This document shows positions 17,115 to 63,735 of a stretch of 64,000 bases of DNA, in pieces. The notes beneath the pieces were generated by a model. It searched no databases. It saw only the letters and a list, made by a program, of their open reading frames with translations, and had not been told where the DNA came from. Positions within the stretch are counted from its first letter, which is position 1, and the number at the start of each line of letters is the position of its first letter. The position numbers were made by a program, and so were the translations under genes. The stretch lies in IMG/VR virus record IMGVR_UViG_3300005337_000441, positions 151,769 through 215,768 of that record; one strand, 5' to 3'.

Positions 17115-17240
17115 CCTCTGCTTCCGAATGAAGAATTTGGTGCGTTTCAACGTTGACGCATCTGTCTTCAGCCCTTCTACGGTGCACGCCGTGGAAGATC
17201 TCCCCTCGTGCCTCCTCTTCTCTTCACTGGAGCCTTTCTC

Positions 17241-18296
17241 ATGGCAACTTTGCTGATCAAACGCGTCCTGGCGCTGCCCTCGACCCTGGACGCTTCCACG
17301 ATGTACATCGTGAAGTCCTCGGACGCGAACTTCGCCGAGCTGTACTTCACGAACGAAGACGGCTCCGCCGTCCGTCGCATCCCCACCACCGACGACACGA
17401 CCGCGCTCATCAACTCGATGCTGCCGGAAACGATCGACCGCCTGACCAGCGCCCGCCACATCACCATCGAAGGCGATGCGAGCTGGGACGTCATCTTCGA
17501 CGGCTCTTCCGACGTCACCGCCAACCTCGTGCTGGCCGACACGGGCATCGTCGCCGGCGAATACGTCGTCACGACCGTCGACTCCAAGGGTCGCACCACC
17601 GGTGGCCGCAACCTGAATGCCTCCGACGTCCCGAACCTGCCCGGTTCGAAGATCGTCAGCGACATCACCGTCAACACCTCCGGCAATGCCGCCACGGCCG
17701 ATGAAGCCGACAAGCTGTCCACCGCCCGCCTGATCAACGGCGTCGCCTTCGACGGCACGTCCGACATCACCATCGACGCCGTCGACTCGACCCCCCGCAT
17801 CGCGGTGAGCGAGAAGGGTGCTCCGCTGGGTGTCGCCACGCTGGACGCCGATGGCCTGGTTCCCGCCAGCCAACTGCCTTCCTACGTCGATGACGTCATC
17901 GAAGTCGCCAACTTCGCTGCCCTGCCGGCGACCGGCGAAGCCAGCAAGATCTACATCACGCTGGACAACAACAAGACCTACCGCTGGGGTGGCTCGGTCT
18001 ACGTCGAGATCCCGTCGGGCGTCGGCACCGCTGACAGCGCCCTGAAGCTGACGACCGCTCGCTCCATCACCGTCACCGGTGACGCCAGCTGGACGGTCTC
18101 CTTCGACGGCTCCGCCAACGTCTCGGCCGCTCTGACGCTGGCCAACAGCGGCGTGACCGCCGGCGAATACCCGGTCGTGACCGTGGACGCCAAGGGCCGC
18201 GTGACCGATGGCCGCGCTCTGGCTCTGGGTGACCTGCCTTCCGGCATCCACGCTGCGACGGCCGACTCGCTGACGCTCGGCGCTTCCGAGTGGTAA
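17241..18296 (+). CDS. Tail fibre / fibre-like virion protein
   Basis: KLxTARxINGVAFDGT and G(V/I)xAGEYxVVTVDxKGR fibre repeats; GVATLD...VPASQLPSYVDDV. Confidence 0.75.
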   Translation: MATLLIKRVLALPSTLDASTMYIVKSSDANFAELYFTNEDGSAVRRIPTTDDTTALINSMLPETIDRLTSARHITIEGDASWDVIFDGSSDVTANLVLADTGIVAGEYVVTTVDSKGRTTGGRNLNASDVPNLPGSKIVSDITVNTSGNAATADEADKLSTARLINGVAFDGTSDITIDAVDSTPRIAVSEKGAPLGVATLDADGLVPASQLPSYVDDVIEVANFAALPATGEASKIYITLDNNKTYRWGGSVYVEIPSGVGTADSALKLTTARSITVTGDASWTVSFDGSANVSAALTLANSGVTAGEYPVVTVDAKGRVTDGRALALGDLPSGIHAATADSLTLGASEW

Positions 18297-18394: not shown

Positions 18395-20320
18395 ATGACC
18401 ACGCTTCAAGTCAAAAGGGTCAACGCCGTACCCAACTCGCCCTACGATCCTTCGACGATCTATATCGTCAAGGCGGCGAACACACAGCTGGTGGAGTTGT
18501 ATTTCACCAACGAAGGCGGCAGCACTCTGCGCCGTGTGTTGACCGAGGGTGATGTTGCTGCGCTCCTGTCGGCCGCCAGTGTGGCGTCTGCAGCCAAGCT
18601 CACCACGGCACGAACCATCAACGGTGTCTCTTTCGACGGCACCGCCAATATCACCATCAACGCGGTGGACTCTACGGCACGCATCGCCGTGAGTGAAAAG
18701 GGAATCCCCAACGGTGTTGCCACGCTTGACGGCAACAGCCAGGTGCCCCTCGCACAGATCAATACCCGTTTCGACAACATCGTCGAGGCGGCCAACCTCG
18801 CTTCTTTCCCGGTGTCGGGTTCGACCCTGAAGGTCTACGTCGCACTCAACACCAACCTGCTGTACCGCTGGGATGCTGGCACGACTGCCTACGTCGCCAT
18901 CGGTGGCGGCACGCTGCCTGACATCATCACGGCTGGTGAATACCCGGTCGCCACGGTCAACTCCAAGGGTCTGGTGACCTCGGGTCGCAACCTGGTGGCG
19001 TCTGACATCCCGAACATCCCGGGCAGCAAGATCAACAGCGCCATCAGCGTGGACACGAGCGGCAATGCTGCAACAGCCACCAATGCGACCAAACTCGCCA
19101 CCGCACGCACCATCAACGGTGTGGCGTTCGATGGCACGGCCAACATCACGATCAACGCCGTCGACTCGACTGCCCGCATCGCTTCGAGCGAGAAGGGTGT
19201 GGCCAACGGCGTCGCGACGCTGGACGCTACCGGCAAGGTCCCTGCAAGCCAACTGCCTTCCTACGTCGATGACGTGAAGGAGTACGCCAACTTCGCTGCA
19301 CTGCCGGGCACGGGTGAGACGGACAAGATCTACGTCACCCTCGACGACAACCGCACCTATCGCTGGGGTGGTTCGGCCTACGTTCGCGTCGGCGCCGATG
19401 CAGCAACTGCTGACACGGCTCTGAAGCTGACCAATGCCCGCACCATTGGTTTGTCGGGTGACGGCACCTGGAGCGTGAGCTTTGACGGCTCCGCCAACGC
19501 GAGTGCTGCTCTGGTCCTGGCCAACGTCAACGCGTCGCCTCAAGCGGACACCTTCCGTCGCTGGACGGTGAACGCCAAGGGTCTGGTCACGGCCAGCTCC
19601 GCAGTGGGTTCGGCTGACATCACCGGCGCACTGGGCTACTCGCCTGTGGATCGCGCTGGCGACACGATGACCGGTGACCTCACGGTCAACAAGGCCAGTG
19701 CCGCTGTCAAGCTCAACACCACGGCAGGCACGTTCGGTGCTGTCTCCTACTCCACCGCAGGCAATCTGCGCTGGGTCGTGGGCAAGGACGCCACAGCCGA
19801 AGGCGGCTCCAACGCTGGTTCGGACTACCGCATCAACCGCTACAACGATGCTGGCGCGCTGCAGGACACTCCGGTGTTCATCAACCGCGCTTCGGGCTTC
19901 GTCGGCATCGGTCTGGGCTCGGCCACGGAACGTCTGACGGTGGGTGACCCCGCCAACGGTGTGGACGTGACGGTCGGCGTTCGTGCCAAGACAGCTGGCG
20001 GTGCCAGCACTCGTGCGCTCATCACGCAGGGTTCGGCCACCGGTTCGTTCAAGATCAAGGTCGACGCAGACGGCAACGGCAGCGAAGGTGCTTTCATCCT
20101 GGAAAACTCCACGGGTGAAATCCTGCGCACGCTGGCCACGCGTCAGGTCGTCATCGGCACCGCCGCTGCAACCGATGGCGCCAAGGTCACGGTCAACGGC
20201 ACGGTCTCGGTCGCTACCGCAACGGCTTCCACTCACGCGCCCAACCTGGCCCAAGTCCGGGCCATGATGGACGAAATCCTTCATCCTTTCCTGTTCATGG
20301 GGGTCACGAATGCCCAATAG
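18395..20320 (+). CDS. Tail fibre protein
   Basis: Duplicated fibre module; ALGYSPVDRAGDTMTGDL and GGSNAGSDYRINRYND fibre motifs. Confidence 0.8.
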   Translation: MTTLQVKRVNAVPNSPYDPSTIYIVKAANTQLVELYFTNEGGSTLRRVLTEGDVAALLSAASVASAAKLTTARTINGVSFDGTANITINAVDSTARIAVSEKGIPNGVATLDGNSQVPLAQINTRFDNIVEAANLASFPVSGSTLKVYVALNTNLLYRWDAGTTAYVAIGGGTLPDIITAGEYPVATVNSKGLVTSGRNLVASDIPNIPGSKINSAISVDTSGNAATATNATKLATARTINGVAFDGTANITINAVDSTARIASSEKGVANGVATLDATGKVPASQLPSYVDDVKEYANFAALPGTGETDKIYVTLDDNRTYRWGGSAYVRVGADAATADTALKLTNARTIGLSGDGTWSVSFDGSANASAALVLANVNASPQADTFRRWTVNAKGLVTASSAVGSADITGALGYSPVDRAGDTMTGDLTVNKASAAVKLNTTAGTFGAVSYSTAGNLRWVVGKDATAEGGSNAGSDYRINRYNDAGALQDTPVFINRASGFVGIGLGSATERLTVGDPANGVDVTVGVRAKTAGGASTRALITQGSATGSFKIKVDADGNGSEGAFILENSTGEILRTLATRQVVIGTAAATDGAKVTVNGTVSVATATASTHAPNLAQVRAMMDEILHPFLFMGVTNAQ

Positions 20321-28512: not shown

Positions 28513-28551
28513 GCGGGAGCAGGGGAAACCCTAGCTCCCGCTTTTGCCGTC
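28513..28551 (+). terminator. Terminator hairpin with TTTGCCGTC box
   Basis: gcgggagc...gctcccgc then ttttgccgtc. Confidence 0.7.
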
Positions 28552-39275: not shown

Positions 39276-41441
39276 ATGCCTCAATTGTCTTTCATCAAGA
39301 CGGCACGCTCGGGCCAAACCGCCCAGGACATCCAGAGCAACAAGCTGATCTCGGGCCTGCGTGAGCAAGTCGAAGGCGGCAAGATCGTCACGACCGCCGT
39401 GGCGCGCTCGATGATCTCGATGGAAAGCCTGTCCGACACCGCGTTCCACGAGCTGGACAACGCCGGCGGCAAGCTGCAGACCGCGCTGGAATCGATCAGC
39501 ACGAACCTGTTCGGCCAGGACTACAAGCCCACGCACGCTCAGCGCGACGCCGCCGTGATGGCTGGCCTGATGGCCGGTGACTTCGTCGGCACCCTGAAGC
39601 GCAAGCACACGGTGGACCAGGTGTCCAACGAGTCGCTGCAAGTGATCGGTTCGGCCAACGTGTCGGGCGCCCTGTCCGAGCGCAGCTTCGGCCTGGAAGC
39701 CTACGACGAGCGCGAAAACCGCAACGCCGTGGTCTACTCGATCGCCTACAACTACCAGGCCAGCCGCCAGGACGAGTTCGGCGAGACGCTGTTCCCGACG
39801 ATCACCCTGACGAACGAAAACGTCGGCTTCGGCATCACCGTCAACCTGATGATGGTCTACGACGCGATCGAGCGCAAGATCTCCGGCGCCGTGACGGACT
39901 TCAACAAGAAGAACATCATCCGCGCCGTCGCTGACCCGACGATCCTGAAGAAGGACCAGACCAAGGTCGTGCCCGTGTGGCGCACCGAGAGCCAGGCCAA
40001 CTTCTCCACGACCATCCCGCACGGCGCCGTCGTCCTGGAAGGCGAGTCCATCGACACCGCTCCTCTGGCCTTCGGCAAGAAGATCGACCTGCTGGGCCTG
40101 AGCCAGACCGACGCTCTGCTGAGCACCGGCGTGATGAACCAGACCGACAGCCTGGACCCGGCCGTCAACCTGGCTGCCGTGTACCTGACGCTCGCCAACG
40201 ACGTCATCAAGGTCAACACGAAGGACCTGGCCTACAGCAACTTCGTGGCCTCGCCGCAGGACAACTACCGCCTGCAAGCGCTGACCTTCCGCACCACCGG
40301 CATCATCCTGAACAAGGACACCACGAACCTGGACGGCACCCCGCTGACCGACCTGGCTCTGCTGGCCTCGGCTGACCTGGTCGTGCACCTGGAAATGGTC
40401 GTCAACGGCACCGTCAACATCGAAACCGGTGAACTGCAGGTCTACGGCAACCGTGTCGCGGCCTTCAAGGTCTTCGACGCCGCCACCGGCAACGAACTCG
40501 ACACCACCGTCGCGGGCAACGCCAAGACCGTGGCCGACGCCATCGCCGCCGGCGAGCTGGACAGCTTCGACCTGCTGGCCTACCGCACCAACATGAACCG
40601 CCGTCAGCTGGGCCAGCTGATCGACGTGACGAAGTTCACCCAGCTGTACAACGTGCCGCTGCGTTCGCCGATCACCTCGATGCACCCCATCAACAACGAC
40701 GGCTCGACCGACGCTTCCGACGTGCAAGCGCTGATCGCCACGACCCGCATCCGCATGAGCAACGACGCCGTCGCCGCTCTGATCTCCACCATGGAGACGC
40801 TGAGCGCTGTCGTCGACGGTCGCGTGCCTGCCGACAACGGTGGTGCCCTCACCGCCATCGGCCGCTACTACGTGGTTCCCGCCTACATGGGCGACCACAT
40901 CGACATGAACACCGCCATCGACTCCATCAAGTCGCATGAGCGTGCTGCCGACATCCAGGCCGTGCTGGTCAACCACATCCGCGACATGGCCTACCGCCTG
41001 TACCGCGACTCCGAGTACAAGGCTGCGGCCGACGCTCTGAGCGGTGGCATCAGCAAGGTTCCGACCGTCATCGTCGCCACCGACCCGGTGATCGCCCGCT
41101 ACATCAACGTGGAAGGCGAACTGCGCACGCTGTCCGGCGGCTTCGACATCCGTCTGGTCTCCACCCTGGACCGCCGCGTCCAAGGCAAGATCTTCGTGAC
41201 CTTCGGCGTGTTCGACGAGACCCGCAACGTCGCTCCGAACCCGCTGAACTTCGGCAACATGGTCTGGGCGCCGGAACTGGTGCTGTCGGCCAACATCAGC
41301 CGCAGCGGCACGAGCAAGGAAACCGTGGTCCAGCCGCGTTACCTCTTCGTGAACCACCTGCCCATCGGCGGCGTGATCACCGTGGAGAACATCCCGGCCG
41401 TGCTGAACAGCGTCGTCATCGACGTCAAGGTCACCCCGTAA
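39276..41441 (+). CDS. Major capsid protein precursor (phiKZ gp120-like)
   Basis: 721 aa; propeptide with SME/ALE/GLE sites; YNYQASRQDEFGETLFPT; LNFG; QPRYLFVNHLP; extreme codon bias. Confidence 0.92.
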   Translation: MPQLSFIKTARSGQTAQDIQSNKLISGLREQVEGGKIVTTAVARSMISMESLSDTAFHELDNAGGKLQTALESISTNLFGQDYKPTHAQRDAAVMAGLMAGDFVGTLKRKHTVDQVSNESLQVIGSANVSGALSERSFGLEAYDERENRNAVVYSIAYNYQASRQDEFGETLFPTITLTNENVGFGITVNLMMVYDAIERKISGAVTDFNKKNIIRAVADPTILKKDQTKVVPVWRTESQANFSTTIPHGAVVLEGESIDTAPLAFGKKIDLLGLSQTDALLSTGVMNQTDSLDPAVNLAAVYLTLANDVIKVNTKDLAYSNFVASPQDNYRLQALTFRTTGIILNKDTTNLDGTPLTDLALLASADLVVHLEMVVNGTVNIETGELQVYGNRVAAFKVFDAATGNELDTTVAGNAKTVADAIAAGELDSFDLLAYRTNMNRRQLGQLIDVTKFTQLYNVPLRSPITSMHPINNDGSTDASDVQALIATTRIRMSNDAVAALISTMETLSAVVDGRVPADNGGALTAIGRYYVVPAYMGDHIDMNTAIDSIKSHERAADIQAVLVNHIRDMAYRLYRDSEYKAAADALSGGISKVPTVIVATDPVIARYINVEGELRTLSGGFDIRLVSTLDRRVQGKIFVTFGVFDETRNVAPNPLNFGNMVWAPELVLSANISRSGTSKETVVQPRYLFVNHLPIGGVITVENIPAVLNSVVIDVKVTP

Positions 41442-56090: not shown

Positions 56091-57716
56091 ATGAACGCAC
56101 TCATGAGTGAACTCATGGCTCGCCATACGCCGCAGATGAACGCCGCCGTCATGAACGGCCTGGCCTGCCTGCACATGCGCGGCGCCCAGGAGTACATCCA
56201 TCGCGTCTTTCTCGGTGTGAACAAAAGCCTGGAAAGTCATGGGCTCAAGTACATCGGCTACGAACCCTGCACGCCCGAGGAGGCGTATGGGGAAGCCACG
56301 AAGGTGCGCAACAACAAGCGCGTCTTCGACATCGCTCAGACCAGCATCTACATGGTGCGCTACAAGTTTGAGTTCAACGGGAAACCCATTCCCGACCGCT
56401 ACATCTATCTGCCCTACGTCGAGGACGGCGGCCTGATGCACATCAGCGGCTCCTTGTATCACCTCTCGCCGGTGCTCTCCGACAAGGTGATCTCGCCCGA
56501 TACGCACAGCATCTTCGTGCGACTGCTGCGTGACAAGGTGACGTTCCGTCGCTGCTACCATTCGTTGGTGATCAACGGGGTGCGTGAGACGGTGCAAGTG
56601 GTCTGGTCGCAGATCTACCGCAAGCAAACCGACAAGCGTCGCATCCAGGCCACTACCAAGGCCGAGACGACGGCAGCTCACTACCTGTTCGCGAAGCACG
56701 GCTTCAAGGACACGTTCCTGCGCTACACCGGGATGGTGCCGCAGGTGAGCGAAGGCGGCTTCAGCGCTCAGACGCATCCGCCCGAGCAGTGGATCCTCTG
56801 TGAGTCCTCGGCCACGTCCACCCACGTCAAGCCGCGCACCTACATCGGGGAGTACTACAACCCCACGCGGATCCAGCTCGCGATTCCTCGTGAATCGTGG
56901 ACTCCGATGGCGCAGTCGCTGGTCGAAGGTTTCTTCTACGTCGTGGATCACTTCCCCGACCGCTTGAAGGCCGAACACCTGGAGAGCACCGCGCTGTGGA
57001 TGATCCTGCTCGGACACATCATCTTCAGCGGCCAGTTCGGCGAGAACAAGCTGTACCAAGACATCCAAGAACACTTCAAGTCGCTGGACGAGTGCGTGGA
57101 CCAGATCATCGCTGAGAAGTTGGCGGAGATCGGGTACAACATCAACAACTTCTACGACCTGATGGCCATGGTCATGGGCACCTGGAACGATCTGGTCTCC
57201 ACAACCGAGCGTTCCAACTTGTCCATGTACGGCAAGAACCTGGAGATCTTGTACTACGCGTTGTATCCGATCACCTCGGATATCTTCCTGGTGAACTTCA
57301 AGCTCAACAAGCTGGCGAGCAAGAAGAAGTTGACGGACAACGACGTCATCGAGACGTTCAACCGCAATTTGAAGGTGCGTGCTATCTTCGAGCTCAGCTC
57401 CAACTCGCTCGTCGCCGAGCCCGTGTCGTACTCCGGGGACCACAAGTACCCGAAGATCACGTCGCGACTGGCCAGTCAGGAAAGCTGGCAGGGTCAGGGT
57501 GGACGCCGCAAGCGTCTGGTCATTGGTCCTGACCAGTACCTGGACACGAGTCAGATCGAAGTCGGCAGCGTGTTGTTCCTCTCCAAGAGCAACCCGTCGC
57601 CGGCCACCAAGATCAACCCGTACGTGCACATCGACCTTGGCACCAGCACGGTGGTTCGCAATCCCGAACTCATCGAGACGCTGGAGAAAACGCAACGACT
57701 TCTGGACAAGAGATGA
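56091..57716 (+). CDS. Non-virion RNA polymerase subunit, N-terminal beta part (phiKZ gp123-like)
   Basis: 541 aa; YEPCTPEE, RYIYLPYV, SPVLSDKVIS, IFVRLLRDK, EVGS, INPY; position after MCP. Confidence 0.8.
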   Translation: MNALMSELMARHTPQMNAAVMNGLACLHMRGAQEYIHRVFLGVNKSLESHGLKYIGYEPCTPEEAYGEATKVRNNKRVFDIAQTSIYMVRYKFEFNGKPIPDRYIYLPYVEDGGLMHISGSLYHLSPVLSDKVISPDTHSIFVRLLRDKVTFRRCYHSLVINGVRETVQVVWSQIYRKQTDKRRIQATTKAETTAAHYLFAKHGFKDTFLRYTGMVPQVSEGGFSAQTHPPEQWILCESSATSTHVKPRTYIGEYYNPTRIQLAIPRESWTPMAQSLVEGFFYVVDHFPDRLKAEHLESTALWMILLGHIIFSGQFGENKLYQDIQEHFKSLDECVDQIIAEKLAEIGYNINNFYDLMAMVMGTWNDLVSTTERSNLSMYGKNLEILYYALYPITSDIFLVNFKLNKLASKKKLTDNDVIETFNRNLKVRAIFELSSNSLVAEPVSYSGDHKYPKITSRLASQESWQGQGGRRKRLVIGPDQYLDTSQIEVGSVLFLSKSNPSPATKINPYVHIDLGTSTVVRNPELIETLEKTQRLLDKR

Positions 57717-58048
57717 TTCGAGACCTGGTCAGCTTCATACGAGCTGTCGAGACATTCGCATCGGAGAACGTGTCGGAGCTGGCGGAACCGCTAGCAGATG
57801 GCACGTTCGTTCACTCGACAAGCCCTGAGTTCTACCACAACGCCACCCTCGACCAGATGGAGCGTTTGCAGGACATTGAAAGCAGTGCAGCAGAAGTTTT
57901 GCTGGACGGCGCAGGGCTGGTCAATGAGCAAGTGAAAAACAAGCTCAAAGCAAAAGGCATGGAGGTCGTGAGACTCCCCGTGCGACTACAACCTCTCGTC
58001 TACGGATTGAAGACCCACCAGTTCACGATTCCCTTGTGCTTTGACTGA
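57713..58048 (+). CDS. Hypothetical protein
   Basis: ATGA overlap with the RNAP subunit gene. Confidence 0.55.
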   Translation: MIRDLVSFIRAVETFASENVSELAEPLADGTFVHSTSPEFYHNATLDQMERLQDIESSAAEVLLDGAGLVNEQVKNKLKAKGMEVVRLPVRLQPLVYGLKTHQFTIPLCFD

Positions 58049-58123
58049 CAAGGGCGGAGTCTGCTTGTAAGCGTTTTCAGTCATGTAAACTTTACGAGTA
58101 AGACCACCAAAAAGGAGATTTCC

Positions 58124-60022
58124 ATGGGTCTTCCGGTCCCTGCGGAATATCCGCTGACACCGATTGTGTACTTCGACGGGTCTCAACCCCCGTTCGTGCC
58201 GATGGTTCCCGTGATGCCCTCCGTGCAGCACGTGCTTCCCTCGGTGGCTGCAGCCGTCGCTAACGAAGCGGCGAGCAAGGCTCTGGCGAATTCGGCGCGC
58301 ATGTTTGCGCACAACCTGATCTCTCAGTCCAATTACGCCAATGGCGTCTTTGGTGAAGTGGTCAAGCTGTGCTGCGACTACGTTGCGCTGAACTTGGCCA
58401 AGGGCATTGCTCGCACGCCCGAAATGGCGATCCCTGAGGCTGTTCAGACCGTGCTGTCTTTGTACACCAGCACACTGCTCTTTCAGTATCCCGACTTGAG
58501 AGCGCTTGTTGACCAACGTGTCATCAATGCCGCTTCCGAGAATGCTCCACAGCTTGAAAATCTAAAGAAGGAGATTGCAGACATGCATCACTATCCACCA
58601 GGCCACGGGATGCCTGGACCGAGTGGCCCAACCGGCCATCTAGGCGGAGGCTATCAAGGCCACGGCCACGTGGGTGCTTATGCGCATGCACCTACGCCCG
58701 GCTACGGTCCTGGCAGTCACTATCCCGCCTACCCTCAGGGTGGTCACTACCCGATGCATAATCGCCCCTACGGCGGTCCTGCTCACGGTGGCTATCCTGG
58801 CGCTCAATATCCGAATGGCGGCCATCCGAGCCAACATGTCGGACACGGCAGCGGTTTTGGCCACCATGGTGGACGCACCATGTCGGTCAGCACTGCCCTC
58901 TCCCATGCCAGCGGCATGCAGGCCTCGCAAGCAAGCAGTGATCGCTTCGCGAGTCGTCCGCAACGCGGCGTGACTCATCATCAACAACAAAACCATCAAC
59001 CGGCGCCCGCACCTGCAACCGAGAAAAATGCTGTCGCGGCCGCCTCCGAGGAATTGACCATTGCCCAGGGGAGCGAAATGGATCGCGCTGCACACCAACT
59101 GACGTACTTCGGATCAGCCTACAACCAGGACCTGCGCCCCCGAGCGCAGCGCTTCATACAGTCGGCTGCTGCGATGACGGGTGCCAACGCGGACCAACCC
59201 CAGCAACACGTCTATTCGACGTGGCTCATGTGCTCGACGCTGGATGACGCCATCACGATGGGTCGCTCCAAGCAGTACGAGACCCAACAGGTCAACAGCC
59301 GCCAAGATATCTATCGCTGTTTCGCGGTGGTCGCACGACCCATCACGAGCGTGGAAGACATCGACGCGGTCATGAAGAAGCTCCTGGAAGCCAACAGCTT
59401 CAAGGGCCTCGCGACCAAGATCCATGCAACGGCCATCGCCCTGGAGCAATCCAAGGCGGAGATGAAGACCGAGGACCCCGACGCCATCGTGTCTTTCCTG
59501 CAGACGGTGGACAACCGGATGACGGACCTCATCAACGGCTTCCTGCAGATCAACATCGGTCTGGCAGGCATGAAGATCGACAGCTTCACCGAAGACGCAC
59601 CCGGCCTGCTCGACTACCTGGTCGGCAAGGGCGGCGGTCTGGCGCAAGCCTATCAGGAATTCGAGAGAGAAGTCTTCTCGGTTCTGAGTGGCGAGGAGTT
59701 CGATCAGGACGCCCTCTCGGCGGCCTACGAAGGTCTGGAGATTCCGCCTGGTCTGAAGTACACGACCATCCCGGAGAACTACTCCATCACCTTCCTGTTC
59801 ATGAACTCCCGTGAGCTCGGCTGGACGGTGGGTGATACGCCTGTGCGCGTCAACCGCCGCACGGCTCCCACGCTGCACCGGGTCATCGAGTCGCTGGTCG
59901 AACACAAGAAGAGCATGGGCCTGCCCACGCTCAACGACGTGATCGTCACCTCCGACAACACGACCTACCGCATCTATCGGGACTACCTGCGCGCAGGCGA
60001 GTACCTGATTTCGACGAAGTAA
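58124..60022 (+). CDS. Conserved phiKZ-like protein (gp124 position) with G/H/Y/P-rich disordered insert
   Basis: 632 aa; NSARMFAHN N-domain, low-complexity middle, KIDSFTED C-domain. Confidence 0.6.
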   Translation: MGLPVPAEYPLTPIVYFDGSQPPFVPMVPVMPSVQHVLPSVAAAVANEAASKALANSARMFAHNLISQSNYANGVFGEVVKLCCDYVALNLAKGIARTPEMAIPEAVQTVLSLYTSTLLFQYPDLRALVDQRVINAASENAPQLENLKKEIADMHHYPPGHGMPGPSGPTGHLGGGYQGHGHVGAYAHAPTPGYGPGSHYPAYPQGGHYPMHNRPYGGPAHGGYPGAQYPNGGHPSQHVGHGSGFGHHGGRTMSVSTALSHASGMQASQASSDRFASRPQRGVTHHQQQNHQPAPAPATEKNAVAAASEELTIAQGSEMDRAAHQLTYFGSAYNQDLRPRAQRFIQSAAAMTGANADQPQQHVYSTWLMCSTLDDAITMGRSKQYETQQVNSRQDIYRCFAVVARPITSVEDIDAVMKKLLEANSFKGLATKIHATAIALEQSKAEMKTEDPDAIVSFLQTVDNRMTDLINGFLQINIGLAGMKIDSFTEDAPGLLDYLVGKGGGLAQAYQEFEREVFSVLSGEEFDQDALSAAYEGLEIPPGLKYTTIPENYSITFLFMNSRELGWTVGDTPVRVNRRTAPTLHRVIESLVEHKKSMGLPTLNDVIVTSDNTTYRIYRDYLRAGEYLISTK

Positions 60023-61544: not shown

Positions 61545-61555
61545 ACCAGGCCAAG

Positions 61556-61588
61556 AGCAGGTGGGGAAACCCCCTGCTTTATGCCGTC
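61556..61588 (+). terminator. Hairpin with TATGCCGTC box
   Basis: agcagg...cctgct then ttatgccgtc. Confidence 0.65.
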
Positions 61589-61707
61589 ACCGTAATTTAA
61601 TTCGATTGATGTCCTGATGGTTTGGAGCAGCTAGCTCCGACTACAATTCTTCATGCAGGTTGAGGGATATGGGACATCGTCGAAACCACCACGAGGGGGT
61701 CGATGAC

Positions 61708-61872
61708 ATGGAGCAACATGGCATCAATCCACAGTCCAGTCAAAGCCGCCATGGACCTGCCCCGTCTAAACGGGAGCTGCGGCAAATGTGCATTGCGAGA
61801 GATCGCAACAAAGCACGCACCACTTATCCCGAACGGGAACAGGAGCAAAGCGTGAGCGCGATGTTCCGGTAG
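61708..61872 (+). CDS. Possible small basic protein
   Basis: GAGGGGG upstream of ATG 61708; 54 aa. Confidence 0.35.
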   Translation: MEQHGINPQSSQSRHGPAPSKRELRQMCIARDRNKARTTYPEREQEQSVSAMFR

Positions 61873-61882
61873 AAAGGAATTG

Positions 61883-62518
61883 ATGGATTCCATTGACAAA
61901 AGCAATCAGGCTGATGTCTCATATGAGATGTTCGCGGAAACAATGATCCGCAAGGAGCCTGAATTTCCGAGCGTGCCTGACGCTGAGAAACTCACTGCAT
62001 TCAACGCACGTCAACTGGCGCTTGCGGATCCTGACTTCATGACGCAGATCGCCGCAGACCGGGAACTCGCCGCCCGTCGCTTCGACGACGCCGTACCCTT
62101 CGCAAGTGAGGTGATGGAGAAGTTGCGCAGCATCGCCAAGGAACACGATCTCATCATCGTGACGCCCAGCGCCAACAGCCGCTACAAGACCAGCTTCTTG
62201 CGCTTCGGTCAGAACGCGGGCAAGTCGGCGGCGGATGACCTGGTCTGGATCTCGTTGGAGCAAACTGGCCTGCTGGAGAAAGCAGTGATGAAGCTGGACA
62301 AGTTGAAGCCTCGCACTGAGGAAACCGACAACACCACTCGCGTCTTCGTCACTCACCGGCAGTTCGGCAAAGCCTTTGCGCAGGAGCAATATCGGCGTGG
62401 CGGCTTCGCTGACATCCCGATGGATCGCGACATGCGTTCTCGTTCTGAGCGACGCGGCCACCAACCCAAGAAGCAACTCAAGGGTCAGGACTATCTGAGC
62501 CTGCGCAAGGGGTACTGA
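61883..62518 (+). CDS. Hypothetical protein with C-terminal QDYLSLRK tag
   Basis: AAAGGA SD; C-terminal motif shared with the next two genes. Confidence 0.65.
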   Translation: MDSIDKSNQADVSYEMFAETMIRKEPEFPSVPDAEKLTAFNARQLALADPDFMTQIAADRELAARRFDDAVPFASEVMEKLRSIAKEHDLIIVTPSANSRYKTSFLRFGQNAGKSAADDLVWISLEQTGLLEKAVMKLDKLKPRTEETDNTTRVFVTHRQFGKAFAQEQYRRGGFADIPMDRDMRSRSERRGHQPKKQLKGQDYLSLRKGY

Positions 62519-62519
62519 C

Positions 62520-62840
62520 ATGCAGCCGCATGATCCGTTCTTCGATGGTCCTCGGGGGATGTTCCTGAAAACCAAACCTCACGTGGTCGAAGTCAAACTG
62601 TTTCCCGGTCAAACGGAATACAGGGACGGTAACCTTCAGGTGAGCATCCAGCCGAGCACAGCGATGACCACCATCACGATCTGCTACAAGACCGGTTCAG
62701 TTTCCGTGGATCCTCCGACCACGGTCAACTTGGTCTTCACCAGAACCGCCGACTACACGGGAGCCAACAAGCTTGCCCTCAAGCCTCGGCCTCCCAAGCA
62801 AAACTACCTCAACCTGCGCAAAGGAAGGTGGAACTCATGA
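62520..62840 (+). CDS. Hypothetical protein with C-terminal QNYLNLRK tag
   Basis: Starts 1 nt after the upstream stop; shared motif. Confidence 0.65.
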   Translation: MQPHDPFFDGPRGMFLKTKPHVVEVKLFPGQTEYRDGNLQVSIQPSTAMTTITICYKTGSVSVDPPTTVNLVFTRTADYTGANKLALKPRPPKQNYLNLRKGRWNS

Positions 62841-63367
62841 ACATCAACGACATCCTCAAGGATGGCGGCATCCCCAAAGGCAAGAAGATGGTCATCGTCG
62901 GTGGTGCGGGTCCTTGGATCGGTGCTCTGGCAGCGATCGCCGGTGGCGCCAAATCCGGCGACAAGGTGATCCTGGACGTCGAGTCCGATCCCCCGACGTT
63001 GGACGGCGTGGAGATTCAGCTCAACGCCACCTTCGACCGCCAGAAGTACCGCGAGTACCAACTCGATGCTGTCAAGTTCATCAAAGACAAGGTGTTGATC
63101 GTTGATGACGGCAATCCCTTCAAGGCGCTGGAACATCACTCCAATCTGATCGAGGCTCACCTCAACGGCAAGCGCGATCCCGAAATGCAAGCCTTCTTCA
63201 AGGACTGGGACCGCGCTGCGCAAGCAGACGGGTTCAACCTCACCGAGGCAACTCCGGAAGAGCGCCCCGAAGACCTGCCCAAGCGCAACGTCAACGGCAA
63301 GCGCATGGCCAACCAACCTCTCGATCGTCGTCAGAACTACCTCACCTTGCGTAACAAACGCTGGTAA
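62837..63367 (+). CDS. Hypothetical protein with C-terminal QNYLTLRN tag
   Basis: ATGA overlap; shared motif. Confidence 0.65.
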   Translation: MNINDILKDGGIPKGKKMVIVGGAGPWIGALAAIAGGAKSGDKVILDVESDPPTLDGVEIQLNATFDRQKYREYQLDAVKFIKDKVLIVDDGNPFKALEHHSNLIEAHLNGKRDPEMQAFFKDWDRAAQADGFNLTEATPEERPEDLPKRNVNGKRMANQPLDRRQNYLTLRNKRW

Positions 63368-63377
63368 ACACCCCGTC

Positions 63378-63427
63378 ACAGGAGCGCTCCCCAAAAGGGA
63401 GCGCTCTTGTTACACTTTCTTTTTTTA
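63378..63427 (+). terminator. Terminator closing the three tagged genes
   Basis: acaggagcgctccc / gggagcgctcttgt then T-rich tail. Confidence 0.8.
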
Positions 63428-63477: not shown

Positions 63478-63735
63478 ATGCTACAGGAGAAACAAGAACA
63501 TCCGCTGATTCTTGAATTGAAAAACCTGAAGTCGGCGATTGCGGCGTGTCCCGTGAGTCCTGAGCGTGAATACGCTTTGCACCGGGCCGATCTTGCAATA
63601 CGTTACGCACAGTCCGTCATTGGACTTTACGAAGGACACCGTGATCGGCTTGTCAACACAGCGCTCGATGTAGGGAAGATACCCAAGAAGTTCTCCGACA
63701 TCTTCAAACTTCCGTCATTCAACAAGAAAAAATAA
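63478..63735 (+). CDS. Hypothetical protein
   Basis: AAGGAGG SD, 85 aa. Confidence 0.55.
   Translation: MLQEKQEHPLILELKNLKSAIAACPVSPEREYALHRADLAIRYAQSVIGLYEGHRDRLVNTALDVGKIPKKFSDIFKLPSFNKKK

What the first reader, a model, noticed from the sequence alone, without database searches (positions are those of the whole stretch)
61883..63367. Three coupled, unrelated genes share a C-terminal Q[DN]YLxLR[KN] tag
Seen: the proteins end ...QPKKQLKGQDYLSLRKGY* (62486-62518), ...KPRPPKQNYLNLRKGRWNS* (from 62799) and ...NQPLDRRQNYLTLRNKRW* (from 63332). Each has a basic, Pro-containing lead-in and an aromatic residue at or near the end. The rest of the proteins (211, 106 and 176 aa) show no similarity by eye. 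The codons differ synonymously (cag gac tat ctg / caa aac tac ctc / cag aac tac ctc), so conservation appears to be at the peptide level. The genes are tightly packed and share one terminator. Inference: a portable C-terminal docking or targeting signal, for example for import into the phage nucleus, binding to a common host or phage hub, or a degron. I know of no described motif of this form.
Basis: partly seen in the sequence, partly recalled or inferred. Interest (0 to 1): 0.88.

Follow-up and report, generated by a model that had tools for sequence, protein, structure and literature searches.

The report
Shared tail peptide on three proteins
Three unrelated, co-translated proteins of a rare uncultured phiKZ-like jumbo phage end in the same strongly conserved 10-11-residue peptide, most likely a docking tag that brings all three to one still-unknown partner.

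Summary
Q[DN]YLxLR[KN] occurs three times in all six frames of the window, each 2-5 residues from the stop of three adjacent genes (P1 61883-62518, P2 62520-62840, P3 62837-63367). BLASTP and profile-profile comparison align only the tails. The cassette recurs in four other metagenomic loci. In the distant ones the bodies are 21-48% identical but the 7-residue core is 71-100% identical, and across 13 tails it is written in many synonymous codons. Selection therefore acts on the peptide. The refined motif is Q-[DN]-Y-L-x-[LM]-R-x2-3-[YFW], preceded by a basic stretch (+6/+7 over the last 25 residues).

The phage is phiKZ-like, and the operon lies just downstream of the nvRNAP gp123 and JADA/gp124 homologs. 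The tag is restricted to this operon: ~90 kb of contiguous genome shows no other copy, DnaB, the nvRNAP subunit and head proteins lack it, and the cultured relatives FLC9 and RSL2 lack the cassette. That argues against a general nuclear-import or packaging signal.

Best reading: an operon-specific docking peptide for one common receptor. The receptor could not be identified, because structure models failed and no multimer tool was available. It matches no known motif tested. Moderately interesting; a new variant of a known kind.

The parts
61549..61588 (+). Hairpin ending the preceding 335-aa gene's transcription unit, immediately followed by TATGCCGTC. It marks the upstream boundary of the operon.
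   Evidence: The fold gives -23.9 kcal/mol, z -3.3. TATGCCGTC at 61580-61588 is one of 6 exact copies in the window against 0.26 expected, all just 3' of gene-end hairpins.
61607..61627 (+). Operon-specific conserved non-coding element TGATGTCCTGATGGTTTGGAG, about 45 nt upstream of the first ORF. Candidate promoter or operator.
   Evidence: It is nearly identical in the distant relative L011, although the proteins there are only about 30% identical (alignment A4). The 12-mer is unique in the window.
61669..61872 (+). Small first gene of the operon (67 aa, ...APSKRELRQMCIARDR...SAMFR*). It has no tag.
   Evidence: The ORF, its ATG and its ribosome-binding site are conserved in L011 (67 aa). No PHROG match.
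61883..62518 (+). P1, 211 aa. The family-specific body contains the conserved IVTTPS and GGFA motifs. The basic stretch ...RSRSERRGHQPKKQLKG leads into the tail.
   Evidence: ORF. Homologs P0004/5/6 are 39-50% identical over the matched stretch and all end Q[DN]YLALRG[KR][FY]. No Pfam, PHROG or PDB match.
62486..62515 (+). P1 tail QDYLSLRKGY (core QDYLSLR at 62486-62506). The AAGGGG inside it is the SD for P2.
62520..62840 (+). P2, 106 aa, with the conserved N-terminal FFxxPxGMF. Translationally coupled to P1 with a 1-nt spacer.
   Evidence: The homologs in L009 and L011 (21-25% body identity) end RPGQNYLNLRKE[RK]W*.
62799..62837 (+). P2 tail QNYLNLRKGRWNS (core at 62799-62819). The AAAGGAAGG inside it is the SD for P3.
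62837..63367 (+). P3, 176 aa, with an ATGA start/stop overlap with P2. Its N-terminal part varies between relatives and its C-terminal module is conserved.
   Evidence: The gene call is 176 aa. The window protein aligns with the L010 homolog only over residues 109-176. The L011 homolog is only 69 aa.
63278..63364 (+). Conserved C-terminal block of P3, PKRNVNGKRMANQPLDRRQNYLTLRNKRW (tail core QNYLTLR at 63332-63352).
   Evidence: Invariant columns in A3.
63375..63427 (+). Terminator of the operon: a 14-bp GC-rich stem followed by a T-rich run.
   Evidence: -28.9 kcal/mol, z -7.9, with 0 of 200 shuffles folding as well.
63478..63735 (+). Conserved neighbouring gene (85 aa, untagged), always found downstream of the cassette. 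Its role is unknown; it is one candidate partner.
   Evidence: Present in L006, L010 (partial) and L011. No PHROG or Pfam match.
56091..60022 (+). Context markers: the nvRNAP subunit (phiKZ gp123 homolog, 56091-57716), a small ORF, and the JADA/phiKZ gp124 homolog (58124-60022).
   Evidence: PDB 7ogp_E at E 3e-61. PDB 9rp3 Gp316/JADA at E 2e-4, plus the position rule that JADA lies directly downstream of the nvRNAP subunit.

Best explanation
The tail is a portable short linear docking motif. Each protein has three parts: a family-specific body, a basic Pro-containing and probably flexible stretch of about 10-20 residues, and the terminal peptide Q-[DN]-Y-L-x-[LM]-R-x2-3-[YFW].

Inferred mechanism: Tyr3, Leu4, Leu/Met6 and the terminal aromatic residue insert into a groove on one common receptor. 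Gln1, Asx2 and Arg7 provide specificity. The +6/+7 flank steers the tail toward an acidic surface.

The four genes form one tightly coupled operon, so the three tagged proteins are made together and delivered to the same site. They either assemble on a multivalent hub or take turns at a single site.

Shown: peptide-level selection, modularity, co-translation, and restriction to this operon. Inferred: that the tail binds a protein, and which one. Candidates, none tested, are a phage protein of the early nvRNAP/JADA neighbourhood (the published Pa36 JADA dimer has a strongly acidic face), the conserved 85-aa neighbour, and a host hub such as the beta sliding clamp.
For: 1. The motif is unique to three adjacent C-termini and is far beyond chance.
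2. Only the tails align between the three families.
3. In relatives the 7-residue core is 71-100% identical while the bodies are 21-32% identical (48% for the 69-aa L011 P3). In each family the tail region is the best-conserved stretch of the protein, together with its flank in P1 and P3.
4. The 13 tails in 5 loci use CAG/CAA, TAT/TAC, CTG/CTC/TTG, CTG/CTC/CTT/CTA/TTG and CGC/CGT/CGA/CGG/AGG. The window and L006 tail cores differ only synonymously.
5. P3 keeps the tail block while its N-terminal domain is exchanged or lost. L010 lacks P2 but keeps tagged P1 and P3.
6. The invariant positions are Q, Y, L and R plus an aromatic end. The basic residues of the flank shift in position, as expected of a docking motif with electrostatic flanks.
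7. Start/stop coupling is conserved in all loci.
Against: No receptor was identified and no binding was modelled or measured. The AF2 models of P1 and P2 have pLDDT 47-52, so even the claim that the linker is disordered rests mainly on composition. Only five loci exist, all from one lineage, so the comparative depth is small. The strong positive charge fits nucleic-acid binding equally well. About 65% of the ~258-kb genome was searched only with codon-restricted patterns, so further tagged proteins cannot be excluded.
Confidence: 0.5

Rival explanations
1. Nucleic-acid-binding tail. The basic, Arg/Lys-rich C-terminus with conserved aromatic residues binds RNA or DNA, in the manner of arginine-rich motifs or of basic tails ending in Trp. 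On this view the three proteins are brought to the same nucleic acid rather than to a protein.
For: Net charge is +6/+7 in the last 25 residues, while the whole proteins are only +2, +7 and 0. Tyr and the terminal Trp/Tyr/Phe are conserved. The operon lies in a transcription-related neighbourhood (nvRNAP subunit, JADA).
Against: The strictly conserved residues are Q, D/N, Y, L and L/M, which are mostly uncharged. The basic residues drift in position. No repeated RNA or DNA target was found: the only conserved non-coding element near the operon is single-copy.
Confidence: 0.15
2. General sorting signal. The tag directs proteins into the phage nucleus, onto the nuclear shell or the early infection vesicle, or into the capsid.
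For: The phage is phiKZ-like, with an nvRNAP subunit, JADA and a phiKZ-type major head protein. C-terminal cargo tags do exist for HK97-fold shells, namely encapsulins (PMC8346489). JADA, encoded 2 kb upstream, localises to the early vesicle in phage Pa36.
Against: The tag sits on only three proteins in ~90 kb. It is absent from proteins expected in the nucleus (DnaB, nvRNAP subunit) and in the virion (internal head proteins, major head protein) within the same window. FLC9 and RSL2 lack it downstream of JADA, and it was not found in other IMG/VR contigs. Published work found no linear import signal and instead found recognition surfaces. None of the candidate late-promoter motifs lies upstream of the operon.
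Confidence: 0.08
3. Mimic of a host clamp-binding motif. The tail docks in the hydrophobic cleft of the host beta sliding clamp, either to block host replication or to recruit the clamp.
For: Q1, L4 and L6 fit the hexameric clamp-binding motif QLxLxL, which can sit at the extreme C-terminus of its carriers (consensus from PMC4564189). The location next to early genes would suit host takeover.
Against: Position 2 is always D or N, not L. The tail continues with R-x-x-aromatic, which is not part of the clamp motif. No binding test was possible. The host is unknown.
Confidence: 0.07
4. Degron. The tail is recognised by a host or phage protease, so that the three proteins are removed together at a set time.
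For: It is C-terminal and exposed, and it is shared by co-expressed proteins.
Against: The final residues vary (GY, RWNS, RW, KF, RY, KYG, KW), unlike degrons that read the free C-terminus (ssrA type; my own knowledge). Nothing links the operon to a protease.
Confidence: 0.06
5. A nucleotide-level or translation-level constraint rather than a protein function: Shine-Dalgarno sequences for the next gene, a ribosome-stalling peptide that supports coupling, or a leftover of ancient paralogy or gene conversion.
For: The K-G codons in P1 and P2 are the SD of the downstream gene. The motif lies at the ends of coupled genes.
Against: The core Q[DN]YLx[LM]R lies upstream of the SD and is not purine-rich. 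P3 has the core but is followed by a terminator, not a coupled gene. The distance from R to the stop varies (3, 4 or 6 residues follow R). The three copies in one genome differ at third-codon positions in 7 of the 8 motif codons, which rules out recent gene conversion. Profile comparison shows no similarity between the bodies.
Confidence: 0.05

Closest known systems
Shared C-terminal docking tails of phage replication and transcription proteins (T4 gp43, gp33 and gp55 tails on the gp45 clamp; T7 gp2.5 and gp4 acidic tails on the DNA polymerase). Recalled from my own knowledge.
   Same: Unrelated phage proteins carry one short terminal peptide that brings them to a single hub. The tail sits at the extreme C-terminus behind a flexible stretch.
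   Different: The sequence is different: basic, Q-[DN]-Y-L-x-[LM]-R-x-x-aromatic. The hub is unknown. All carriers are encoded in one small operon. The carriers have no recognisable function.
Bacterial beta-clamp-binding motif QLxLF / QLxLxL (PMC4564189)
   Same: A leading Gln, Leu at positions 4 and 6, and C-terminal placement in some carriers.
   Different: Position 2 is D/N instead of L. A conserved Arg and a terminal aromatic residue follow. No evidence of clamp binding.
Family 1 encapsulin targeting peptides, consensus SDGSLGIGSLKRS (PMC8346489)
   Same: A short C-terminal tag behind a flexible linker, shared by unrelated cargo proteins encoded together. It ends in a small-hydrophobic pattern followed by a basic residue.
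   Different: There is no GSL core. The operon is not next to the HK97-fold shell gene: the major head gene lies 20 kb away. The known internal head proteins of this phage lack the tag.
Protein import into the chimallivirus nucleus (PicA/Imp pathway; PMC11087766)
   Same: The same kind of phage, and the same question of how selected proteins are sorted.
   Different: Known cargo is recognised through folded surface patches, and no linear signal has been found. Here the tag is linear but is carried by only three proteins and not by expected nuclear cargo.

Membership tests
Bacterial beta-clamp-binding motif (QLxLF / QLxLxL) | Sequence fits the QLxLF or QLxLxL consensus | tested here: not met
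   All 13 tails read Q-[DN]-Y-L-x-[LM]. Q1, L4 and L6 fit, but position 2 is never L (consensus).
Bacterial beta-clamp-binding motif (QLxLF / QLxLxL) | Binds the hydrophobic cleft of the beta clamp | not testable with these tools
   No multimer prediction or binding assay was available, and the host is unknown.
PIP box (Qxx[LIM]xx[FY][FY]; consensus from my own knowledge) | Aromatic pair at positions 7-8 after Q | tested here: not met
   Positions 7-8 are R-[KNG] in all tails.
Encapsulin Family 1 targeting peptide | Similarity to the consensus SDGSLGIGSLKRS (GSL core) | tested here: not met
   No GSL in any tail; consensus from PMC8346489.
Encapsulin Family 1 targeting peptide | Cargo genes lie within a few kb of the HK97-fold shell gene | tested here: not met
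   The major head gene is at 39276-41441, 20 kb from the operon, with many unrelated genes between them.
Amphipathic-helix tags (membrane-targeting sequences, microcompartment encapsulation peptides) | High helical hydrophobic moment with a hydrophobic face | tested here: inconclusive
   muH is 0.05-0.25 and mean hydrophobicity is negative, lower than most shuffles of the same residues.
Chimallivirus nuclear-import cargo signal | Present on proteins known to be imported (replication and transcription enzymes) | tested here: not met
   The DnaB-like helicase and the nvRNAP subunit in the window lack the tag. The literature reports no linear signal.
ssrA-type C-terminal degron (my own knowledge) | Conserved last 2-3 residues and free carboxylate (e.g. 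LAA) | tested here: not met
   The last residues vary: GY, NS, RW, KF, RY, YG, KW.
FtsZ conserved C-terminal peptide ([DE]-[IV]-P-x-[FY]-[LIM]-[RK]-[RK]; consensus from my own knowledge) | Central Pro and the F-L-R-K arrangement | tested here: not met
   There is no Pro inside the tail. Only the L-R-[KN] end resembles it.
Paralogous gene family (simple duplication) | Detectable similarity outside the tail | tested here: not met
   BLASTP and hhalign align only 9-21 tail residues.

The most novel reading that the evidence does not exclude
The tail is the first linear, transferable sorting signal in a nucleus-forming-type jumbo phage. It would be a short C-terminal address that takes a dedicated set of early proteins to a phage-built structure (the early infection vesicle or JADA, the nuclear shell, or the import machinery). 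It would be usable as a tag to send foreign proteins there.
Probability: 0.1. Interest if true: 0.85.

Novelty: new variant of a known kind. Interest (0 to 1): 0.45.

Why it matters
Short docking peptides are how viruses wire unrelated proteins onto a hub, and very few are known in jumbo phages. This tag is short, sharply defined and under strong selection, so it gives a direct experimental handle. A synthetic peptide or a GFP-tail fusion should pull out the receptor, and with it the function of an entire orphan operon that sits beside the early-transcription genes nvRNAP and JADA. If the receptor proves to be a phage compartment or a host hub, the tag would also be useful as a targeting tool. 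The limits are that the lineage is rare and uncultured, the host is unknown, and the function remains inferred.

Tried and rejected
1. Homology of P1, P2, P3 and their neighbours: nothing in Pfam, PHROGs or PDB, by single sequence or by profile. tblastn against 50,697 phage records found nothing.

2. More relatives: the search for related loci with single proteins or the P1 alignment returned only the source contig, in both IMG/VR and JGI metagenomes. A 58-bit pattern for the P3 block found nothing new in GTDB genomes or IMG/VR. A P2-tail pattern in GTDB gave 2 matches, neither a real tail (the one QNYLNLRK translation sits in a 3-codon ORF), so there is no host-side copy of the tail.

3. Codon-restricted motif scans of IMG/VR: 34 + 14 hits outside the source contig. 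All are out of frame, internal to ORFs, or in tiny ORFs.

4. Structure: AF2 on the shallow alignments gave pLDDT 46.6 (P1) and 51.7 (P2). These are unusable, so no fold search was run.

5. ESM Atlas: best scores were 0.48 (whole P1) and 0.57 (P3 tail, hits to RecA-family fragments). These are far below the level at which hits mean anything.

6. Amphipathic-helix idea: low hydrophobic moment.

7. Chimallin: the 604-, 660- and 597-aa orphan proteins are not chimallin. Chimallin is too divergent (22-26% identity among cultured phages) to fish out of the unseen part of the genome, so the idea that the tail mimics chimallin's own tails could not be tested.

8. JADA C-terminus: FLC9 JADA ends GQDVFLIRKVK*, which resembles the tag. 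RSL2 JADA and this phage's own JADA do not, so I treat this as coincidence.

9. Expression data: only the source DNA run holds the locus.

10. Literature: no paper describes the motif.

11. One look-up was wasted on a TTG-start ORF that does not match the gene call on record.
Full report
**1. Observation**

- P1: 61883-62518, 211 aa, ends ...KGQDYLSLRKGY*.
- P2: 62520-62840, 106 aa, ends ...PPKQNYLNLRKGRWNS*.
- P3: 62837-63367, 176 aa, ends ...DRRQNYLTLRNKRW*.

A six-frame scan of the 64 kb finds Q[DN]YL.LR[KN] only at these three places. Looser forms such as YL.LR or Q[DNEQST][YFW][LIVM].[LIVM][RK] also occur only there. Each copy lies 2-5 residues from a stop. From the amino-acid composition of 71 called proteins, 3e-6 such C-terminal occurrences are expected. 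I also ran a test that does not presuppose the motif: any 7-mer with five fixed residues shared by three C-terminal 15-mers. It reaches the observed sharing in 4 of 5000 shuffles, and it ignores the fact that the three genes are neighbours.

The genes are coupled (TGAcATG between P1 and P2; an ATGA overlap between P2 and P3). A -28.9 kcal/mol hairpin with a T-run follows P3. The last 25 residues carry net +6, +7 and +6.

**2. Not paralogs**

BLASTP between the three proteins aligns only 9-21 tail residues. Profile-profile comparison of the three family alignments does the same: 11 columns for P1/P3 and 18 for P2/P3.

**3. What genome this is**

The window is the last 64 kb of IMG/VR contig IMGVR_UViG_3300005337_000441 (215,768 bp), from a rhizosphere metagenome. 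The same phage is on a 257,852-bp ENA contig that runs past the window's end. Judging by the size classes of the contigs carrying the protein at window 1781, the ENA contig also carries that protein. If so the genome is roughly 258-307 kb.

The window encodes:
- phiKZ-type internal head proteins and a major head protein (39276-41441);
- a DnaB-like helicase, ribonucleotide reductase and thymidylate synthase;
- a homolog of the phiKZ non-virion RNA polymerase subunit gp123 (56091-57716; PDB 7ogp_E, E 3e-61);
- two genes downstream of that subunit, a 632-aa protein weakly similar to Gp316/JADA (9rp3, E 2e-4).

The JADA paper states that JADA always lies directly downstream of this nvRNAP subunit. 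It also reports that JADA is early, essential, associated with the early infection vesicle, and forms a dimer with a strongly acidic face (PMC12931631).

The nearest cultured phages are Burkholderia phage FLC9 (38% identity in the polymerase subunit) and Ralstonia phage RSL2 (34%). I did not find this phage's chimallin, so "nucleus-forming" is an inference from these markers.

**4. Relatives**

The three families are extremely rare.
- An exhaustive phmmer search of P1 against 1.84 billion cluster representatives gave four clusters.
- The P2 profile gave three proteins.
- P3 gave two.

Their contigs show the same cassette.
- L006 is about 81-92% identical to the window proteins.
- L009, L010 and L011 are distant: GC 48-50% against 58%, bodies 21-32% identical.
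- In all of them P1 ends KGQ[DN]YL[AS]LR[GK][KRG][FY], P2 ends RPGQNYLNLRKE[RK]W, and P3 ends NG[KR]RMA[NT]QPLxxxQNYLT[LM]RN[KQ]RW.
- The 7-residue core is 71-100% identical where the bodies are 21-32% identical, or 48% for the short L011 P3. In each family the tail region is the most conserved stretch, extending into the flank in P1 and P3.

The 13 tails use many synonymous codons for Q, Y, both Leu and Arg. Between the window and L006 the cores differ only synonymously, for example CGC to AGG.

The refined motif is Q-[DN]-Y-L-x-[LM]-R-x2-3-[YFW].

**5. Modularity**

The window's P3 and the L010 homolog are alignable only over the C-terminal 68 residues. The L011 homolog is just 69 aa. L010 has no P2, and its second gene is not a P2 body. 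The same tail block therefore sits on different or truncated bodies.

**6. The operon**

A hairpin at 61549-61585 ends the previous unit. A 21-nt element at 61607-61627 is conserved in L011 and unique in the window. The ribosome-binding site and ATG of a 67-aa ORF (61669-61872) are conserved in L011 as well. That ORF, P1, P2 and P3 therefore form one bounded, tightly coupled unit.

The K-G codons after LR in P1 and P2 double as the Shine-Dalgarno sequence of the next gene. This explains part of the tail's purine-rich end. It does not explain the core, and it does not explain the P3 tail, which precedes a terminator.

**7. Distribution of the tag**

No further copy exists in the window, or in about 26 kb beyond it reached by walking the ENA and Logan contigs. 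That makes about 90 kb of contiguous genome, roughly 35% of the total. Two codon-restricted scans of IMG/VR also cover the unseen 152 kb of the source contig. They found only P1 and P2 there; P3 uses TTG, which the patterns cannot match. All 48 hits in other viral contigs are chance.

FLC9 and RSL2 have neither the cassette nor the motif downstream of JADA. DnaB, the nvRNAP subunit, the internal head proteins and the major head protein all lack the tag. This argues against a genome-wide nuclear-import or capsid-packaging signal. It agrees with published work that found recognition surfaces rather than linear signals (PMC11087766).

**8. Mechanism**

The evidence supports a short linear docking motif on a basic, probably flexible tether, shared by three co-translated proteins. 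It would bring them to one receptor. Peptide-level selection, modularity, coupling and operon restriction are shown. Binding to a protein, and the identity of that protein, are inferred.

I could not test candidate receptors:
- no multimer tool was available;
- the Atlas gave no lead;
- no RNA data exist.

The main rival is nucleic-acid binding by the highly basic, aromatic tail. The pattern of invariant uncharged residues and drifting basic residues speaks against it, but does not exclude it. A crude hydrophobic-moment test gives no support for an amphipathic membrane or encapsulation helix.

**9. Comparison with known motifs**

- The tail shares Q1, L4 and L6 with the hexameric clamp-binding motif QLxLxL (PMC4564189), but never has Leu at position 2.
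- It lacks the aromatic pair of a PIP box.
- It lacks the GSL core of encapsulin targeting peptides (PMC8346489).
- It lacks the Pro of the FtsZ C-terminal peptide.
- It lacks a fixed C-terminal end of the ssrA kind.

It is not a member of any of these families. It works most like the shared C-terminal hub-docking tails of T4 and T7 replication and transcription proteins (my own knowledge). No paper in the library describes the motif.

**10. Verdict**

This is a real, strongly selected, previously undescribed C-terminal tag that is private to one small operon of a rare phiKZ-like lineage. It is a new variant of a known kind of device. The interest is moderate: it is clean and directly testable, but the lineage is uncultured and the function unresolved.

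Noticed in passing
window 9737, 14968, 36914 (-), 41510, 46319, 61580; near-copies at 28543 and 48655: TATGCCGTC occurs 6 times exactly, against 0.26 expected. Each copy sits immediately 3' of a GC-rich hairpin at the end of a gene, on that gene's sense strand. It looks like a conserved terminator-associated element, or a terminator/restart element, of this phage.
   Followed up: partly
window 28625, 45647, 48691, 54927 (exact); 41535 (1 mismatch); one more about 420 nt beyond the window end (L003): CACATATACT(T) occurs 4 times exactly, against 0.01 expected, 25-40 nt upstream of gene starts. One copy precedes the gene ahead of the nvRNAP subunit. Candidate phage promoter class. The tagged operon does not have it.
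   Followed up: partly
window 6183, 8335, 9766: (G)TATCYTATGA lies just upstream of three head or structural genes. Candidate late-promoter motif.
   Followed up: no
window 61607-61627: A 21-nt non-coding element (TGATGTCCTGATGGTTTGGAG) upstream of the operon is conserved in the distant relative L011 and is unique in the window. Possibly an operon-specific promoter or operator. It contains a short direct repeat, TGATG...TGATGG.
   Followed up: partly
SAM[FL]R*). It is the first gene of the operon and is untagged.
   Followed up: partly
L013 10751-12814 (Burkholderia phage FLC9 gp89, JADA homolog): This protein ends GQDVFLIRKVK*, which resembles the P1 tail GQDYLSLRKGY*. RSL2 JADA (...AIMLRMVQ*) and this phage's own JADA (...GEYLISTK*) do not, so it is probably coincidence or a structural strand.
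   Followed up: partly
window 58124-60022: The JADA homolog has a long Gly/Tyr/Pro/His-rich low-complexity stretch (about residues 150-290) between its two domains. This matches the disordered linker described for Pa36 JADA.
   Followed up: no
L054 13865-15076 (about 14 kb beyond the window end): A transposase-like gene (phrog_4285, E 3e-36) lies inside the jumbo-phage genome, flanked by unusually long non-coding gaps.
   Followed up: no
window 62888-62950 (P3 residues about 18-38): A Gly/Ala-rich hydrophobic segment, MVIVGGAGPWIGALAAIAGGA, is flanked by Lys residues. It could be a membrane anchor or a nucleotide-binding loop. It is present only in the window and L006, not in the L010 or L011 P3 proteins.
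   Followed up: no
window 17208-18296 and 18395-20320: Two adjacent genes share repeated tail-fibre / head-decoration-like domains, with matches to many PHROG tail-fibre families.
   Followed up: no
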